From the NCBI GenBank assembly GCA_964252035.1, contig OZ176208.1: a stretch of 64,000 nt of DNA, one strand, 5' to 3'. This DNA is from Podarcis erhardii (taxonomy: Eukaryota). Below, piece after piece: positions 10,230 to 30,400 of this stretch. Position 1 is the stretch's first letter. Each line of letters begins with the position of its first letter. The translations under genes and the position numbers were made by a program. The notes beneath the pieces were generated by a model. The model searched no databases. It was not told where the DNA came from and was given only the letters and a program-made list of their open reading frames with translations.

Positions 10230-10840
10230 ACTGGTAACACCCGGGTTACAATACTGTAACACACCACTTGTAAAGCTGCCTCTGAAAAGCACCATGGAAG
10301 CTTCAACTGGTGCAGAATGCCATCTCTAGACCATTTACTGAAGCTAACTGCTAAGGATACATCACTTCAGTATGAATAGATTTTTCACTGGCTCCCACTT
10401 TGCTTGTTTATGGGCTCAATTCAAAGTGCTGTTTTTGCTCTTTATACTCCATGGCAGGGATATCTAAAGGACTGTCTTCTTCCACATGAACCAGACAGAT
10501 CTTTTTCTAAGGCCCTTCTTTTGGCGGCCCAACCACAGTAGGCATGTGACTACTAGAGAGAAGGGCAACTCCCTTCTCAGGCATATCTTCCTGGCACCTT
10601 CTTTGTAATCTTTTAAGTGTCGAAGTTTGTCATGTTCTTTGTGCCTTTAATGACTCATAGTTTATTCTCATTTCTGTTTATGTTGTCTTTATCTGAGTTT
10701 CTAATTACCCTCTCTATTGTTTTATCTGCTGTTTTAGTTAGCTATCTCTTGTTGTTATGTTTATTGCATCTTACTACTTCACATTGTTAGCCGCCTTAAG
10801 GCTATTTGGCAAAAGGCCGGATAGAAGTGCTATAAATACG
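10230..10840 (+). mobile_element. Old degraded L2 fragment
   Basis: Degenerate YCNT...KLPLK...KLQLVQNA and cactggctccca...caattcaaagtgct motifs, also seen in the 28280 copy. Confidence 0.5.
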
Positions 10841-11116
10841 TATGCAAGCAAGCTGTCTAGTAAGTACCATAAGCTACATCTATTCATAGCCATTTGCTTT
10901 CCTCCACATTTCTGTAATTTACACCAGAGCAATTCTATTAACTTGGAAGGGATTAGTGTGGAGTTAAAGATTTGAAAATTACAACTTTTGCAAGAGCTCT
11001 GCTACCTTGATGGCTGTGGATATTAAACTGCCTCATAAAAACAGACGGATGTGTGTCTTGTCAGAAAAAGCACCTCATTTCTGATTGCACTAATTTAAAA
11101 AATCTAAAATCTGGTG

Positions 11117-11243
11117 CATGGATAGGGAATCTGTGGCCCTCCAGATGTTGTGGGACTACAACTCCTATTATCTCTGATCATTGGCCATGCTGGTTTGGGC
11201 TGAAGAAAATTTGGACATCTGGAGGGCTGCATGTTCCCCAATG
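11117..11243. mobile_element. Palindromic squamate MITE
   Basis: gccctccagatgttgtgggactacaactcc...catctggagggc. Confidence 0.6.
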
Positions 11244-11387
11244 CTCTCTAGTGACTGGTGCTGACCTTGGCTCATGGAAATCTAGGTTCCAACCTCAGCT
11301 CATTCATGAACTCAACATGGTTTTGTCAAAACAAAATAAAAAAATTCCTTCCAGTAGCACCTTAAAGACCAACTAAGGTAGTTCTTG

Positions 11388-11425
11388 GTATGAGCTTTCG
11401 TGTGCATGCACACTTCTTCAGATAC
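11388..11425 (-). ncRNA. Minimal type I hammerhead ribozyme motif (sequence-intact)
   Basis: GUAU-CUGAAGA-A-GUGUGCAUGCACAC-GAAA-GCUC-AUAC: stem I GUAU/AUAC, core CUGANGA and GAAA, hairpin stem II, palindromic AGCU stem III, predicted CUC cleavage between 11392 and 11391. Confidence 0.7.
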
Positions 11426-11524
11426 TTCTTCAGATCTGTGTATCTGAAGAAGTGTGCATGCACACAAAAGCTCATACCAAGAACTAACTTAGTTGGTCTT
11501 TAAGGTGCTACTGGAAGGAATTTT

Positions 11525-11530
11525 TTTATT
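11525..11530 (-). terminator. Candidate SLC25A31 poly(A) signal AATAAA (inside a Penelope-like element)
   Basis: First canonical AATAAA on the minus strand after the stop codon, about 363 nt downstream. Confidence 0.4.
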
Positions 11531-11892
11531 TTGTTTTGACTATGGCAGACCAACACGGCTACCTATCTGTAAATGGTTTTGTCACTATAAGTTGCCCAAT
11601 TGTTAGATGAAAATAGCAGCAACCTTGGTTTTGACTTGGTAATGAAAATGAGTGACACAACAAATACAAGTGAAAAAACGAAAGCCAGGCATTTGAAAGG
11701 AATGCACACACACAAAAACAAGTAAATGCAACTCTTTATGAAAGGAAACAAATCACGCTTTAGCTGCCTTCAAATCATTAGTGTAAATGATTAGCAGACC
11801 CATGCAAAACTTTTGATTGTTCTTACAGTACTCATCATATAATAATGAATGACATTTTTAACAGTAGGGACAGGTGACTATTATCAGTGACT

Positions 11893-12093
11893 TTAGTCAG
11901 ATGATCGGCCTATTGATGGATCAATATTAAGAAACTCCTTAATTTTGTCATATAGGACCAACACCAAGGCACCACCTGTCCCACGAAGTACATTTGAAAA
12001 GGCTCCCCGAAAAAAGGCATTTAATCCTTCCTGGTTGTATATCTTGAAAAAGCAGTCAATGGTTCCTTTGTACTGACGTTCAGCCTCTCCACT
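11893..12093 (-). CDS. SLC25A31: SLC25A31 exon 6 (201 nt to stop)
   Basis: [66 protein letters not shown] followed by TAA at 11895-11893. Confidence 0.95.
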
Positions 12094-15000
12094 CTGTGTT
12101 AAAATAATTTTAAACAAAGACAGATGTTTGGAAAACGTACATGCTTACTATGTGGCAAGGGACTAATCTGGCATTTGGTATTTTTATAATTTTCAGTCTA
12201 GGGTCTGATATATGGTATTAGGCATTTTTGTAATTATAAGTCTAGAAACACCTCTCACTAATTTTATCTCTGTTTCAATATAAGAACCTTAATGAGTAAA
12301 TGCTTCCCTGATGTAGTTCTCTGCAGCTAAATTTAGCAAGTCTGTGATCTTCTTGTGATGTTTCTTTTAAGCTTCAGAGTTAAACAAGGTCATGTCATTC
12401 CTCAGGGTGTTTTGAAGCATGCTGATTCTTGGATAATGTCTGAAGCATATTTTTGGAACATTGTTCTTCACTGCCTTTTCGCTGAACTTCACATGGTTCC
12501 TCACCCCCATCACCAACACCGACAAGTACCAATCTAGAAGTGTTTAGATTTCCCCAAAGTTGGTAGTATGGTTTTTTTGATAGATATTTTAAAAAATGTG
12601 TTTGCATCAAAATGTTTACACTGGAGAATTTAATTTTCTTAATCTATTTTTTAAGATAGATATTTATATTGAGACAGTCAAATAGTATTCCATATAAATC
12701 TGTAAGATTAAAAAAATTAATTTCTCTTGCTTCCAAATTGGCATACAGTACTTCCTTTTCAAAAGTCTCTAATGTTGAAAAAAAATCCAGAAGGAAGATT
12801 ACATAAAATTACATAAGTTGTTTCTCTGTTTGCAAATAAAACAGCTGTCAGGCAGACCCATATTGCTGAAATACACAGCAGACCTTCAAGAAAGCACACA
12901 ACAGAGCTTGCGTTCTTTGCACCACAGGGCGACAACAGGATGGTTACTGCCCCCTTACCAGCAACAGGAAAGGAATAAAAATAAATGTATTTCTCTTAAC
13001 ACAGAGACACACACTGCTGCTTTGAAATTAAATCATGAAAAAGGAAAATCACCTGGTTTGCTCAGCACATCAACAGGCAAATACATGTTTCTGATTAGCC
13101 AGCTGGGCAACCACACAAATCTGTGGTCAAAATGTAGGGTCAGAATGTAGGGTCCAAATACCCAGGGAAATGCTCCCCCCCCCCACCTGAGAGGGACCTG
13201 GTGATAGCACTTGTTATATGTGATATGCTATGTTGTGCAATTAGCTGATTGATAAAAATGGCTGCAGGAGCCTCTGCAAATGCAAATTGAAGGATGTCAG
13301 TGGGGGACAGGAGAAGTGTGTAACTTTGAATTTTTTTAATATTTCCCCTCCTAGAATTCCCCCCAGGACTCTACCCTTCTAGATAGGCCTCCCGTGCTTA
13401 GACACCAGCAAGTATATGTCGTTTACCTGCATCATCATGCGTCTTCTGACAGTGTCAAAGGGGTAGGACAGTATGCCAGAAAATACAGTCACAGCTTGAG
13501 CTATTGCAAAAGATACGACAAATGGTGTTTCTTTTGGATTTGGCAACATTCCCTAAGAAGAGAAAAGAGAAATAAGAATTCACTGGGGTATCTTGAGAAT
13601 CTAAATGGAAAAACAGATGCTGTCAAATCATTATATTGCTTCAGAATTTCCTAAGTGCATTGTATTTTGAATGGATTATTTTACATGGTCAGTGTAGTTG
13701 GAAACATATTCTTTTCTCCTTTTGTTTTACGCTTTACACATGGCAAACAAGCCAAATGATTTTTTGGGGGGAGGGGGCAAATAACATATATTAAGATTGC
13801 AACTTAAGCACATTTAACTTGTGCAATTGCAGCTTTACACGCTTTGCAGCTGGCCAGCTGATATCACACAAATTAAAGACACACAAGACAGAGAGCTTTT
13901 AGGCTCTCAGACTTGCTTACTGGGCTTTGGGAAAGTCTCATGCGGGCTCTGGGAGGCTCCTGCAAGATCTCTTGCAGTCCGAACGAGACTGTCCAGGAGC
14001 CTGGTTAGCATTCCTTAGAGCTTAAAAGCTGTTTCTGTAGCAGGAAATCACAAGAGATTTACTTCTAAATAAAAATGCACAGGATTCATCTGTGAGTCAC
14101 ATTAATTAACTAAATAGTATAAAATGTTTTATCCATACATATGAGCATCCCCATGTCCAATGAATACACTGAGATCTTGATCGTAAGGGCTGCCCAATTT
14201 AACAGTCAACTTGCTTTCTCCTTTTAAATCAACAGGGCAGCCATTGTGAGCAAAGGAGCATCATATTGCATCAGACCTTTGGGCTTCAGGAACCAATTAG
14301 CAAATTGGGACGAATAAATGTGTAGAAATAATTAGGTTTAAAACAAGTGTTATCATCAATCATTAGGTAACAACAGAGCTCCTCTGGATCATGTAGTAGA
14401 TTTATTAAATTTATAAAATAATAACAAACTAAAGGAATACAAACCAAATTGGGCATGTCTTTTTATTTTTAAGTCTTAGCTTTCTGTTTCTGCAAAAGGA
14501 TTAATAATATCTTAGCTGATAGGATAAATACTATAAAATGCATCCATAATAAAGGTGACAAATAATCCTTTTTTTTAATGGGAAAGGGTGAGTTTGATCA
14601 GAAAACTTACTTTTATGGTGTCATAACATCCAAAATAGGATGCCCGATATACAATGATCCCCTGTACTGAAACACCAAATCCTTGATATAGGCCGGTAAT
14701 GCCATCTTTTTTTGCAATTTTACCAATACAGTCAGCAAGGCCTTTGAACTGTCGCTCTTCCATACCTAAAATGAAAGAAGAAATAACAAAACTAGGGGAG
14801 CACTTTAGCTCTAAGAATTCCCCACAATGAACAGGGGAACTATTACTATTAATTCATTTTTTTATCCTGTCCTTCTTACCAAAGGAGCCCAGGGAGCCAT
14901 ATAAGGAGCCATACAACAGGTAAAATATCATGAAAAACATTTTTCAAAATAAATACAACAATTTTCAGCTGCTGAAAACCAACTACCCATCACATACTAA

Positions 15001-27400: not shown

Positions 27401-30400
27401 GTGGCTTGTTTCTATACGAATTAATTGTGAACATAGATAGTGCTTTATTGAAATAGTCATGTATGTTCTGTCCTAAGAAGCTGGTGACTTCTCTTAAGAT
27501 TCCAAGCTATTCTGTTTAGCTGAAATTAAGTTAGATTTTTTTTTTTTTGGTAGGATTTGGCATTTCAACCAACTTGTAGCAGGGTCACAATTTTATTCCT
27601 TACAGTTTCAAGGAAATTAAGCAGGGAAACTCTGATTTTGCTGATAGTCTACCTGCTGACAGTAGAAACAACCAGCTTTTTGGTTGGATTGTCCGTGGAG
27701 GAAGAGTGGCTTAAGACAGCAGATGAAATCAGCTGTTTATTATACCTGTCATTATTAATAGTTACAGATAGGTAGCCGTGTTGGTCTGCCATAGTCAAAA
27801 CAAAACAAATTCCTTCCAGTAGCACCTTAAAGACCAACTAAGTCAGTTCTTGGTATGAGCTTTCGTGTGCATGCACACGTGTATCTGAAGAAGTGTGCAT
27901 GCACACGAAAGCTCATACCAAGAACTGACTTAGTTGGTCTTTAAGGTGCTACTGGAAGGAATTTGTTTTGTTTTGTCATTATTAATGTTGGACCGACCTT
28001 TGTATCCAGACCCTCAAAGTCCCTCTTACTTCTCAGCAAGGCCATTTCTTCTCAGCAAGGCTAGTCCATTATGGCCCATGCCCAAGCATGAGATGACAGC
28101 AAGATCCACTCTTCACAATTTCCCACACCACACTAAGCATAAAAAGTTGCCCCAGCAAAAGTACAGGGAACTGGGCCTAGCTCAAAAGGATTAGTCAAAC
28201 AGTTAAGTTATTTAAAGCAAGAGTTTATAAGAAATGTGCAACAACAGCAAGAAACCTGTACCAATAACAATTAACAAACATCAGGTGGTTTGGACTGGGT
28301 GTCCATCAATATGCAGATGATACCCAGCTCTACCTCTCTTTCAAATCAGAACCAGTGAAGGCGGTGAAGGTCCTGTGTGAGTGCCTGGAAGCGGTTGGAG
28401 GATGGATGGCGGCTAACAGATTGAGGTTGAATCCTGACAAGACAGAAGTACTGTTTTTGGGGGACAGGAGGCGGGCAGGTGTGGAGGATTCCCTGGTCCT
28501 GAATGGGGTAACTGTGCCCCTGAAGGACCAGGTGCGCAGCCTGGGAGTCATTTTGGACTCACAGCTGTCCATGGAGGCACAGGTCAAATCTGTATCCAGG
28601 GCAGCTGTTTACCAGCTCCATCTGGTACGTAGGCTGAGACCCTATCTGCCTGCAGACTGTCTCGCCAGAGTGGTACATGCTCTGGTTATCTCCCGCTTGG
28701 ACTACTGCAATGCGCTCTATGTGGGGCTACCTTTGAAGGTGACCCGGAAACTACAACTAATTCAGAATGCGGCAGCTAGACTGGTGACTGGGAGTGGCCG
28801 CCGAGACCATATAACACCGGTCTTGAAAGACCTACATTGGCTCCCAGTACGTTTCCGAGCACAATTCAAAGTGTTGGTGCTGACCTTTAAAGCCCTAAAT
28901 GGCCTCGGTCCAGTATATCTGAAGGAGCGTCTCCTCCCCCATCGTTCTGCCCGGACACTGAGGTCCAGCTCCGAGGGCCTTCTGGCGGTTCCCTCACTGC
29001 GAGAGGCCAAGTTACAGGGAACCAGGCAGAGGGCCTTCTCGGTAGTGGCGCCCGCCCTGTGGAATGCCCTCCCATCAGATGTCAAAGCTACCTGACATTC
29101 AGAAGACATCTGAAGGCAGCCCTGTTCAGGGAAGTTTTTAATTTGTGACATTTTAGTGTATTTTTCATCTTTGTTGGAAGCCGCCCAGAGTGGCTGGGGA
29201 AACCCAGCCAGATGGGCGGGGTACAAATAATAAATTATTATTATTATTATTATTATTTTGTATGGCCTTTTTTTTTTGGTCAGATTCAATCCTAAACGAA
29301 TGTAATGAAATACTGCAATAGTTTGCACACAAAAATATATGCACACTAGTGAAAAGCTTGTGTTTTCATACCAGATTCCCAAGGAAAGCCTAGCAAAGAG
29401 CTCTTCCTGCTGCCCCATATAGCTTAAGTGGGGAAGGTGAAGAAATCATGGGGAAGTTTCCTGTGTGGAGGTGCATGGTTAGTGGCAATTCATTCTAAGG
29501 AAAAGTGTGTACACTCGCATAGCACACTGGCTAGCCAATGGCTGTACACCTTAATGTAGTTAGTTATAAAGATGGGCTACGAGCCACACAAGGACATTCA
29601 CAGCTTCAAAAACTGACCACTTTCCAATAGGCAGTCTAATAACTGGCACACCAGCCTTATTTTTTTATTTGCATACATCCACACACAAAATATTAATGTA
29701 GTCAGAAGCTAAAGAACAAAAGTTAGTAACACCTTACTTCATAACATTATACAGTTCAGTTTCCTTATCTGTAAGGTTCTTTTTGAGGGTTCCTAAATTA
29801 AAAGGATTTGGAAGAATATTTTTCTTTTTGGCGATCTGAAAAACAAGCAGAATTAAAAGCTCACAGTAGGTGTGTGATTCAGATTTTAACATACAAGTAC
29901 GAGGGCTGTTATTAAAAATATTAAGCTAGTTCAGCAATTCACATGCTTTCTGATCCTATGCTGAGCTATCAAGTGACATGCTACATTATTTTTGAAAGAT
30001 TTATGGTTATTTTCAAAAATGTAATTGTTTTTCAAAACCAACTTGAACAAATCTTCTGTTACAAATTGTTTTGTGCTATTTATTGGAGAGATAAAACGTT
30101 GTAGCCAACAAAGTCATACTTTGAGTAAACCCAAAGAAATAATGGACAATACTAATGTGTGTTCACAGATTTCAAAGCATCTAAGTATAATTTAGTTGCA
30201 TACAACCCATAGCTTTCAGCACAGAGACGTATTATGCAGTTTTAATAAATTATGTGGATCAAACTAAACTAATTTGATGCCAATCAGAATTAAAATTTCA
30301 TGCTTGATTCTTGTTGTTTAGTTTGGAATTTAGAAGTACTGTACTACCTAATGTGTATTATTTTACACATACTTTTGGTTAAATGGTGTAAAAAAACCTT

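What the first reader, a model, noticed from the sequence alone, without database searches (positions are those of the whole stretch)
11325..11572. Hammerhead-ribozyme-bearing palindrome just downstream of SLC25A31, intact motif on the gene's sense strand
Seen: a 216-nt hairpin-forming insertion with a 12-bp TSD starts about 320 nt after the ANT4 stop. The distal arm read on the minus strand (11425->11388) is GUAU CUGAAGA A GUGUGCAUGCACAC GAAA GCUC AUAC, a complete minimal type I hammerhead. The other arm has GAAA->AAAA (G12A), which should inactivate it. Established: Penelope-like pLTRs carry minimal hammerheads whose palindromic stem III (here AGCU) favours dimeric cleavage, and an extra A after A9 is tolerated in a known viroid hammerhead. 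Inference: SLC25A31 transcripts running past the poly(A) signal would contain a potentially self-cleaving RNA that could influence termination or 3' processing. Alternatively the ~100-bp fold-back would sequester the ribozyme and instead form an ADAR/Dicer substrate.
Basis: partly seen in the sequence, partly recalled or inferred. Interest (0 to 1): 0.75.

Follow-up and report, generated by a model that had tools for sequence, protein, structure and literature searches.

The report
Young Penelope-like mini-insertion beside ANT4
The hammerhead-bearing palindrome is real, but it is an ordinary, recent, dead-on-arrival fragment of a very abundant lizard Penelope-like retrotransposon, it lies past the apparent end of the ANT4 mRNA, and its ribozyme motif would be locked inside a 100-bp hairpin.

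Summary
A DNA contig from a close relative joins 11316 directly to 11573. That is a precise empty site, so this is a young insertion.

Inverted 5'-ended arms, a tail at one end, a variable TSD and a minimal hammerhead together match the published signature of Penelope-like element (PLE) insertions. A second copy lies at 27760-27974. This scan already holds 153 notes on such elements in this genome.

The proposed effect on SLC25A31 is not supported:
- A high-depth, probably RNA, contig ends near 11729, 157 nt before the element.
- The two motifs lie on opposite strands, so there is no partner in cis for the dimer that this ribozyme type needs.
- Forcing the hammerhead fold costs about 46 kcal/mol against the fold-back.
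- Raw RNA reads show no pile-up of ends.
- Rfam reports no hammerhead.

Already known; low interest.

The parts
11317..11328 (.). Left copy of the 12-bp target-site duplication ATGGTTTTGTCA. Its last 4 nt (GTCA) also match the arm end, which is microhomology at the priming site.
   Evidence: empty site in organism F
11329..11425 (-). Tail-less arm, sense on the minus strand: the module from the hammerhead to the inner reverse-transcription start site. It carries one private change at 11378.
11388..11425 (-). Intact minimal type I hammerhead motif: helix I 4 bp, CUGAAGA, extra A, helix II GUGUG/CACAC, GAAA, palindromic AGCU, C17. Predicted cut between 11392 and 11391.
11426..11437 (.). Junction filler between the two arms, forming a 12-nt tandem duplication (ACTTCTTCAGAT x2 with 11412-11423).
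   Evidence: (D4)
11438..11540 (+). Tail-bearing arm, sense on the + strand. It starts at GTGTATCTG, the same base where longer family copies diverge from this one.
   Evidence: loose ends at 11438
11440..11477 (+). Second hammerhead motif with G12A at 11466. G12 sits in a CpG, so this is the expected methyl-CpG decay change. 92% of organism B RNA reads from family copies carry G here.
11541..11572 (+). 32-nt unpaired tail present at one end only (TATGGCAGACCAACACGGCTACCTATCTGTAA). The same tail occurs in copy 2.
11573..11584 (.). Right copy of the 12-bp target-site duplication.
11525..11530 (-). AATAAA in the gene's sense, supplied by the element's T-rich arm end. It is the first canonical signal after the stop codon. 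This T-run varies within the family and the hexamer is absent from copy 2.
   Evidence: 5-nt deletion at 11529 in 111 of 547 reads
11729..11740 (-). Apparent ANT4 mRNA 3' end. The X1 contig stops at 11729. CATAAA lies at 11740->11735 and a GU-rich run follows.
11893..12117 (-). Last coding exon of an ADP/ATP carrier (ANT4-like C-terminus), including the stop codon at 11893-11895.
27760..27974 (-). Second copy of the same element in the opposite orientation: tail at 27760-27793, tail-side arm 5'-truncated inside helix II, distal arm complete. TSD (T)GTCATTATTAAT at 27747-27759 and 27974-27986.
27881..27918 (+). Intact minimal hammerhead of copy 2, identical to the one at 11425->11388.

Best explanation
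A 244-nt, non-autonomous, dead-on-arrival insertion of a very high-copy Penelope-like retrotransposon family of this lizard lineage. It consists of two copies of the family's roughly 100-nt terminal module, running from just before the hammerhead to the reverse-transcription start site, joined head to head.

Inferred mechanism, following the published in vitro behaviour of the Anolis Poseidon element. The element's endonuclease made nicks staggered by 12 nt. Both freed 3' ends primed reverse transcription on element RNA. One started at the inner start site (...UUUUGAC, with 4 nt of microhomology to the target). The other started 32 nt further 3', which produced the tail. The two cDNAs ran to or near the RNA's 5' end and were joined with a 12-nt duplication. 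The result is a near-perfect palindrome with a hammerhead motif on each strand.

The hammerhead is the family's own minimal ribozyme. It has no monomeric helix III and needs a second sense copy to build one. It has no demonstrated or likely role for the neighbouring ANT4 (SLC25A31-like) gene. The element lies about 157 nt past the apparent mRNA 3' end. In any read-through RNA the motif would be paired with its antisense arm.

Shown: the anatomy, the insertion and empty site, the family's abundance, and the energetics. Inferred: double-strand priming, a transcription start at the hammerhead, and lack of function.
For: - Anatomy: arms, TSD, tail and junction duplication.
- Empty site: contig 18 of X16 (1444 nt, depth 97) joins 11316 directly to 11573, skipping 256 nt, which is the 244-nt element plus one TSD copy. 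X15 matches the flanks with 0 differences and its contigs run 22 nt into each end of the element.
- Abundance: summed word depth on the element is 2-5 million against about 98 on the unique flanks.
- Second copy at 27760-27974 has the same tail, a different TSD and a different inner truncation.
- Published PLE signatures:
  - An inverted 5'-truncated copy plus a 30-40-bp tail at one end only (PMC8557442).
  - The Anolis Poseidon protein cleaves and extends both strands and starts reverse transcription at two internal sites, and the tail is the sequence between them (PMC11167929).
[quoted passage not shown] All are met here.
- Poseidon_Ac shows the same ribozyme layout.
- Longer family copies continue upstream of 11438 and 11425 with a shared sequence containing a TATA-like ATATAG about 30 nt upstream (loose ends).
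- Energetics: the fold-back scores -188.6 kcal/mol against -6.8 for the isolated motif. Forcing helices I and II in the nascent RNA costs +45.8 kcal/mol.
- Transcripts: the X1 contig ends near 11729 and covers nothing unique beyond that.
Against: - No full-length, RT/GIY-YIG-encoding relative carrying this exact terminal module could be retrieved with the tools at hand. The link to an autonomous PLE therefore rests on architecture and on unchecked notes from this scan.
- The arm has no sequence similarity to Poseidon_Ac.
- Rfam hammerhead models do not score the motif.
- X1 is only guessed to be RNA and comes from another species (organism A), which may lack the insertion. No RNA from a carrier of the insertion was available, so read-through has not been measured in a carrier.
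- Contigs cannot prove an RNA end.
Confidence: 0.87

Rival explanations
1. One reading: the intact minus-strand hammerhead self-cleaves SLC25A31 read-through RNA, as a monomer or by pairing in trans with other PLE transcripts, and so influences termination or 3' processing.
For: - The motif is letter-perfect and on the gene's sense strand.
- It lies only about 157 nt past the apparent poly(A) site, a distance RNA polymerase II normally still transcribes (established knowledge).
- PLE hammerheads cleave weakly as dimers in vitro (PMC4209133).
Against: - There is no second sense motif in cis. The other arm gives the antisense.
- The complementary arm is transcribed first and lies 14 nt away. The hammerhead fold costs +45.8 kcal/mol, with pair probabilities of 1e-19 to 1e-31.
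- In vitro activity of such motifs is low even as dimers.
- No read ends were found at the cut site in the Anolis element, and there was no pile-up of ends in X23 here (table 6).
- There is no RNA coverage between 11573 and 11728.
- The insertion is absent from a close relative.
Confidence: 0.03
2. As a passive by-product, read-through or antisense transcription across the element yields a hairpin RNA of about 100 bp that is edited by ADAR or diced into small RNAs. There would be little or no consequence for ANT4.
For: The fold-back is near perfect, with 99 of 101 pairs and -188.6 kcal/mol. Family copies are transcribed on both strands in another species (X23).
Against: There is no RNA evidence at this locus. 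The A>G and T>C differences come from other genomic copies and cannot be read as editing. No small-RNA data were available.
Confidence: 0.15
3. The element is a fold-back or MITE-type DNA transposon, and the hammerhead-like motif has no connection to Penelope-like elements.
For: It has long terminal inverted repeats and a small size. The Rfam hammerhead models are silent.
Against: - A 32-34-nt tail sits asymmetrically inside the TSD in both copies.
- TSD length is not fixed, at 12 versus 11-13 nt.
- The inner ends of the arms differ between copies, as 5' truncation predicts.
- Most family contigs continue upstream of the arm's inner end rather than stopping there.
- The motif meets all descriptor features, with zero hits in shuffles.
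Confidence: 0.03
4. In carriers, the element-borne AATAAA (11530->11525, gene sense) creates an alternative, longer ANT4 3' UTR that ends inside the right arm.
For: It is the first canonical hexamer after the stop codon, 363 nt downstream. The apparent native signal is the weak variant CATAAA.
Against: There is no RNA from a carrier. The site lies downstream of an apparently efficient end, where X1 depth of 488 drops to 0. It would also be buried in the hairpin stem.
Confidence: 0.06

Closest known systems
Truncated or inverted insertions of Penelope-like elements (Penelope/Poseidon/Neptune clades), as described by Craig et al. 2021 (PMC8557442) and for Anolis Poseidon by PMC11167929
   Same: An inverted copy abuts the main copy. 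A 30-40-bp tail sits at one end only. The TSD has variable length. A hammerhead lies in the terminal repeat. A TATA-like block lies upstream in longer copies. The anatomy fits priming from both cleaved strands at two start sites.
   Different: This copy is an extreme miniature, with two modules of about 100 nt and no ORF or promoter. The arm shows no sequence similarity to Poseidon_Ac. The clade of the autonomous partner is unknown.
Minimal hammerhead ribozymes of metazoan PLEs (Cervera & de la Pena 2014, PMC4209133; Lunse et al. 2017, cited in PMC6765202)
   Same: Helix I is 4 bp. The CUGANGA box is present. There is an unpaired nucleotide between A9 and G10.1. The G10.1-C11.1 pair is present. 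Helix II is long. GAAA is followed by a palindromic AGCU with no monomeric helix III, and then C17.
   Different: Helix II is itself a 14-nt palindrome (GUGUGCAUGCACAC). Two molecules therefore prefer to pair through helix II rather than helix III. Activity is untested.
Animal non-LTR retrozymes (tandem hammerhead repeats giving circular RNAs; PMC7229834, bioRxiv 10.64898/2026.07.22.740005)
   Same: It is a small, non-coding, hammerhead-bearing derivative of the PLE terminal region.
   Different: Retrozymes are direct tandem repeats with two sense ribozymes that excise a unit. Here the motifs are on opposite strands, so no unit can be excised or circularised.
Co-transcriptional cleavage elements downstream of poly(A) sites, such as the human beta-globin CoTC (from my own knowledge, not checked here)
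   Same: Its position is a few hundred nt past a poly(A) site, on the sense strand.
   Different: There is no evidence of cleavage. The insertion is young and lineage-specific. The motif is sequestered in a duplex.

Membership tests
Penelope-like element insertion | Hammerhead motif in the terminal (pLTR) region | tested here: met
   The descriptor hits at 11425->11388 and at 27881-27918, with none in 200 shuffles. Features are as listed in PMC4209133.
Penelope-like element insertion | An inverted, 5'-shortened copy abutting the main copy, forming inverted repeats | tested here: met
   The 101-nt arms are 98% complementary. Copy 2 has arms of unequal length. The layout is described in PMC8557442.
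Penelope-like element insertion | A 30-40-bp tail at one end only | tested here: met
   The tail is 32 nt at 11541-11572 and 34 nt at 27760-27793, identical in sequence and absent from the other arm.
Penelope-like element insertion | Retrotransposition signature: a TSD of variable length and a precise empty site | tested here: met
   TSDs are 12 bp and 11-13 bp. The organism F contig joins 11316 to 11573.
Penelope-like element insertion | Full-length relatives encode an RT plus GIY-YIG endonuclease and share this terminal module | not testable with these tools
   No eukaryotic genome search was available. Longer copies exist (loose ends and 1015-nt contig 19), but their sequence is not returned. 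Scan notes s1-268925 and s1-238298 mention such ORFs and remain unchecked.
Hammerhead ribozyme (type I) | Conserved core C3-A9, G12-A14, A15.1-U16.1 and H17 | tested here: met
   The sequence is exact at 11425->11388. The other arm has G12A.
Hammerhead ribozyme (type I) | Three helices around the core within one molecule | tested here: not met
   Helices I (4 bp) and II (5 bp) form. Helix III exists only as an intermolecular AGCU/AGCU, and no second sense copy lies in cis.
Hammerhead ribozyme (type I) | Match to the Rfam hammerhead covariance models | tested here: not met
   No hammerhead family was reported at E<=10 on 1.3 kb or on a 55-nt slice, and none at gathering score on the whole window.
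Hammerhead ribozyme (type I) | Self-cleavage at C17 | tested here: inconclusive
   There is no pile-up of read starts or ends anywhere on the element in the X23 raw RNA reads (table 6). Those reads come from other copies in another species, and the library is not end-specific.
Non-LTR retrozyme | Two or more sense hammerheads in direct tandem repeats | tested here: not met
   The motifs are on opposite strands in both copies.
MITE / fold-back DNA transposon | Symmetric termini abutting a TSD of fixed length | tested here: not met
   An asymmetric tail lies inside the TSD, and the inner arm ends vary.
microRNA precursor families (Rfam MIR1222, mir-3149, mir-581, mir-466 and others) | Score at or above the family's gathering threshold | tested here: not met
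   The best score is 63.9 bits against a threshold of 90. Both strands score about equally, as any long hairpin would.

The most novel reading that the evidence does not exclude
In animals that carry the insertion, nascent ANT4 read-through RNA in meiotic germ cells folds into the 101-bp hairpin just past the poly(A) site. This hairpin then acts either as a source of hairpin-derived small RNAs against the still-active Penelope-like family, or as a polymerase pause or cleavage site, possibly through trans-pairing of its hammerhead with abundant PLE transcripts. Because the insertion is present in one lineage and absent in a close relative, this would be a natural test case for how a ribozyme-bearing palindrome affects a germline gene's 3' end.
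Probability: 0.04. Interest if true: 0.5.

Novelty: already known. Interest (0 to 1): 0.15.

Why it matters
The value here is mainly in annotation. Hammerhead-bearing palindromes next to genes in this lizard genome are by-products of how Penelope-like elements integrate, not gene-associated ribozymes.

This locus gives a clean worked example. It has exact boundaries, an empty site in a relative, a tail, and microhomology at the priming site. All of this fits the two-strand, two-start-site model proposed from in vitro work on the Anolis Poseidon element.

Two smaller points may be useful to specialists:
- The catalytic G12 always sits in a CpG (C11.1-G12). Methylation-driven decay should therefore inactivate genomic hammerheads preferentially by G12A, as seen in one arm here.
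- The filled and empty alleles in close relatives offer a natural comparison, should anyone wish to test effects of such palindromes on a neighbouring germline gene.

Tried and rejected
- **Rfam.** I ran it at E<=10 on 1.3 kb and on a 55-nt slice, and at gathering score on the whole window. No hammerhead was reported. Only sub-threshold microRNA-hairpin models hit, equally on both strands, and I rejected these as the generic effect of a long hairpin.
- **Metagenome scan.** An exact scan for the 35-nt motif, meant to fetch further copies, found nothing. The bacterial genome and viral collections were not scanned because they cannot hold lizard repeats.
- **Poseidon_Ac.** I searched its consensus for the arm, tail and ribozyme strings. 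The ribozyme architecture is the same, but there is no sequence match, so this family is not Poseidon_Ac itself.
- **Cervera 2014 supplements.** These are not held.
- **Scan notes by sequence.** The search was blank.
- **Tandem or circular template.** I considered that the 6 nt before the right arm (ATCTGT) might be the tail end of a preceding unit. I rejected this because the match is only 6 nt and is explained by the 12-nt junction duplication.
- **ORF starting in helix II, as in Poseidon_Ac.** I rejected this because stop codons follow within 10 codons.
- **G share at 11466 in DNA contigs.** I did not read the 23% G share as a subfamily signal. Contigs can be laid on either arm and sort themselves by best fit.

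Full report
**What is in the sequence**

The region holds two 101-nt arms, 11325-11425 and 11440-11540. They are 98% complementary and 14 nt apart. They are flanked by an exact 12-nt direct repeat, ATGGTTTTGTCA, at 11317-11328 and 11573-11584.

Between the right arm and the right repeat lie 32 nt with no partner, TATGGCAGACCAACACGGCTACCTATCTGTAA, at 11541-11572. The inserted DNA is therefore 244 nt, not 216 nt.

The centre carries a 12-nt tandem duplication, ACTTCTTCAGAT twice (repeat D4). I read 11426-11437 as junction filler.

The + strand copy at 11440-11477 differs only by A at 11466, which is G12A.

The last coding exon of an ADP/ATP carrier lies on the minus strand at 11893-12117. It matches bovine ANT1 at E = 2.4e-30 and carries a C-terminal extension beyond the end of ANT1. 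The stop codon is 321 nt from the element's edge. I did not test which ANT paralogue this is.

**Is the motif more than chance?**

I wrote a descriptor for the minimal hammerhead:
- helix I of at least 4 bp
- the CUGANGA box
- 0-1 extra nucleotide
- helix II of at least 4 bp closed by G10.1-C11.1
- GAAA
- a self-complementary 15.2/16.2 pair
- U16.1
- H17

It finds exactly two hits in the 64-kb window, at 11425->11388 and at 27881-27918. It finds none in 200 dinucleotide-preserving shuffles. Both hits lie in copies of the same repeat.

Rfam's hammerhead models do not report the motif at any threshold I could set. The probable reason is that the motif has no monomeric helix III. The sub-threshold microRNA hits score the same on both strands and reflect only the long hairpin.

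**It is an insertion, and a young one**

Reads and contigs of four public runs were laid on 10400-11892.

Run X15 (organism E) matches the unique flanks with no differences. Its contigs run 22 nt into each end of the element.

In run X16 (organism F, about 1% different in the flanks), one 1444-nt contig at depth 97 joins 11316 directly to 11573. It skips 256 nt, which is the 244-nt element plus one copy of the 12-nt repeat. That is a precise empty site, so the 12-nt repeat is a true target-site duplication.

The summed word depth on the element is 2-5 million, against about 98 on the flanks. This is not a copy number, but it shows a very high-copy family.

**A second copy**

Positions 27760-27974 hold the same element in the opposite orientation.
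- It has the same tail, 34 nt here.
- It has a different duplication, (T)GTCATTATTAAT.
- Its arms are of unequal length. The tail-side arm starts inside helix II. The distal arm starts at GTGTATCTG and carries a perfect hammerhead.

In both copies the arm without the tail has the intact motif.

Two of the four arms begin at GTGTATCTG and a third begins within 2 nt of it.

In longer copies of the family the sequence continues upstream as ...ATATAGAAGGATCTGGCAACTTCTGTTTCA (loose ends at 11438 and 11425). The TATA-like block lies about 30 nt upstream. This fits a transcription start at that base.

Earlier notes of this scan, s1-234774 and s1-234773, propose the same idea. I have only partly tested it.

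**What it is**

Three papers describe this anatomy.
- Craig et al. 2021 (PMC8557442) state that Penelope-like element (PLE) insertions are 5'-truncated. They often carry an inverted 5'-truncated copy that forms inverted repeats. They often have a 30-40-bp tail at one end only.
- The Anolis Poseidon study (PMC11167929) shows that the purified protein cleaves and extends both DNA strands. It starts reverse transcription at two adjacent internal sites in the RNA, and the tail is the sequence between them.
- Cervera and de la Pena 2014 (PMC4209133) define the PLE minimal hammerhead by these features:
  - a 4-5-bp helix I
  - a long helix II
  - a G10.1-C11.1 pair
  - a palindromic 15.2-16.2
  They also note pairs of motifs close together on opposite strands.

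Every one of these features is present here.

The Poseidon_Ac consensus has the same ribozyme layout (CUGAGGA, U, long helix II, GAAACGUC) and a TATA-like run upstream. It shares no sequence with this family's arm. This is therefore another PLE family, whose autonomous partner I could not retrieve.

**How it most likely arose (inference)**

1. Nicks staggered by 12 nt freed two 3' ends.
2. The + strand end ...TTTTGTCA paired through GTCA with the RNA's ...UUUUGAC and copied the tail-less arm.
3. The - strand end primed 32 nt further 3' and copied the tail-bearing arm.
4. Both cDNAs ran to or near the 5' end of a short RNA and were joined with a 12-nt duplication.

The two targets share TGTCA, and both overlap the arm end by 4-6 nt.

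The mini-copy has no promoter and no ORF, so it is inert.

**Does it matter for the ANT gene?**

*Transcript end.* Run X1 (organism A) is guessed to be RNA, and its coverage pattern fits that guess. It covers nothing on unique intergenic bases, yet a 767-nt contig at depth 488 covers 11729-11892 and continues into the gene.
- That contig stops at 11729. The stop is just after CATAAA (11740->11735) and just before a GU-rich run.
- Nothing covers 11573-11728 or 10450-11099.
- The apparent mRNA end is therefore 157 nt before the element.
- Contigs cannot prove an end, and organism A may lack the insertion. This argues against abundant read-through in that species but is not a measurement in carriers.

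*Signals.* The first canonical AATAAA in the gene's sense lies inside the element, at 11530->11525. Its use is untested.

*Dimer partner.* A read-through RNA would contain the antisense arm first, and then, 14 nt later, the sense hammerhead. It would have no second sense copy to build helix III.

*Energetics.*
- The fold-back scores -188.6 kcal/mol against -6.8 for the isolated motif.
- Forcing helices I and II in the nascent RNA costs +45.8 kcal/mol.
- The pair probabilities are 2e-31 for the outer pair of helix I and 2e-19 for G10.1-C11.1.
- Even two free motifs would prefer to pair through the 14-nt palindromic helix II.

*RNA ends.*
- Raw RNA reads of organism B (X23) cover only the repeats. 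99% of them run on into unlike sequence, so they come from other copies.
- They lie equally on both strands and show no place where molecules begin or end in excess (table 6).
- The Anolis study likewise found no reads ending at the cut site. It also found that ribozyme mutants inserted normally in vitro.

Whether that duplex is edited or diced is untested.

**The G12A arm**

92% of X23 reads carry G at 11466, so A is a change relative to the family's common state. G12 follows C11.1, which makes it part of a CpG. G12A is the change expected from methyl-CpG deamination on the opposite strand. This follows from the sequence and general knowledge and is not tested further. I did not use the lower G share in the DNA contigs, because contigs can be laid on either arm.

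**Standing and scores**

This kind of element is described in the literature. The same scan has already recorded it many times on other DNA of this genome: 153 notes hold the words 'hammerhead' and 'Penelope'. These include palindromic mini-inserts (s1-220647, s1-259090, s1-259088) and the second copy in this window (s1-241383).

I rate it already known, with interest 0.15.

Noticed in passing
window 11100-11240: A very high-copy SINE-like repeat, with word depth about 9e5 against about 98 on unique DNA. It has 24-nt inverted arms at 11125-11148 and 11215-11238. Copies are transcribed in organism B RNA.
   Followed up: no
window 11700-11745 (minus strand): Apparent ANT4 mRNA 3' end near 11729, with the weak hexamer CATAAA (11740->11735) and a GU-rich run just downstream. 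There is no canonical AATAAA between the stop codon and the element.
   Followed up: partly
window 11465-11466 and 11399-11400: The hammerhead's C11.1-G12 step is a CpG in the DNA, so methylation-driven decay should hit the catalytic G12 (or C11.1) first. One arm shows exactly that change.
   Followed up: partly
window 11325-11328 and 27974-27976: Both insertion targets share TGTCA and overlap the arm end (GTCAAAAC) by 4-6 nt. This suggests microhomology between the nicked target and the RNA at the inner reverse-transcription start site.
   Followed up: partly
window 11525-11533 versus 27962-27970: The T-rich arm end varies within the family: TTTTTTTATTTTG here and TTTGTTTTG in copy 2. A 5-nt deletion appears in 111 of 547 RNA reads. 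An AATAAA on the antisense of each arm is therefore present in only some copies.
   Followed up: no
window 10400-10449: The edge of another high-copy repeat, with word depth about 4.5e4.
   Followed up: no
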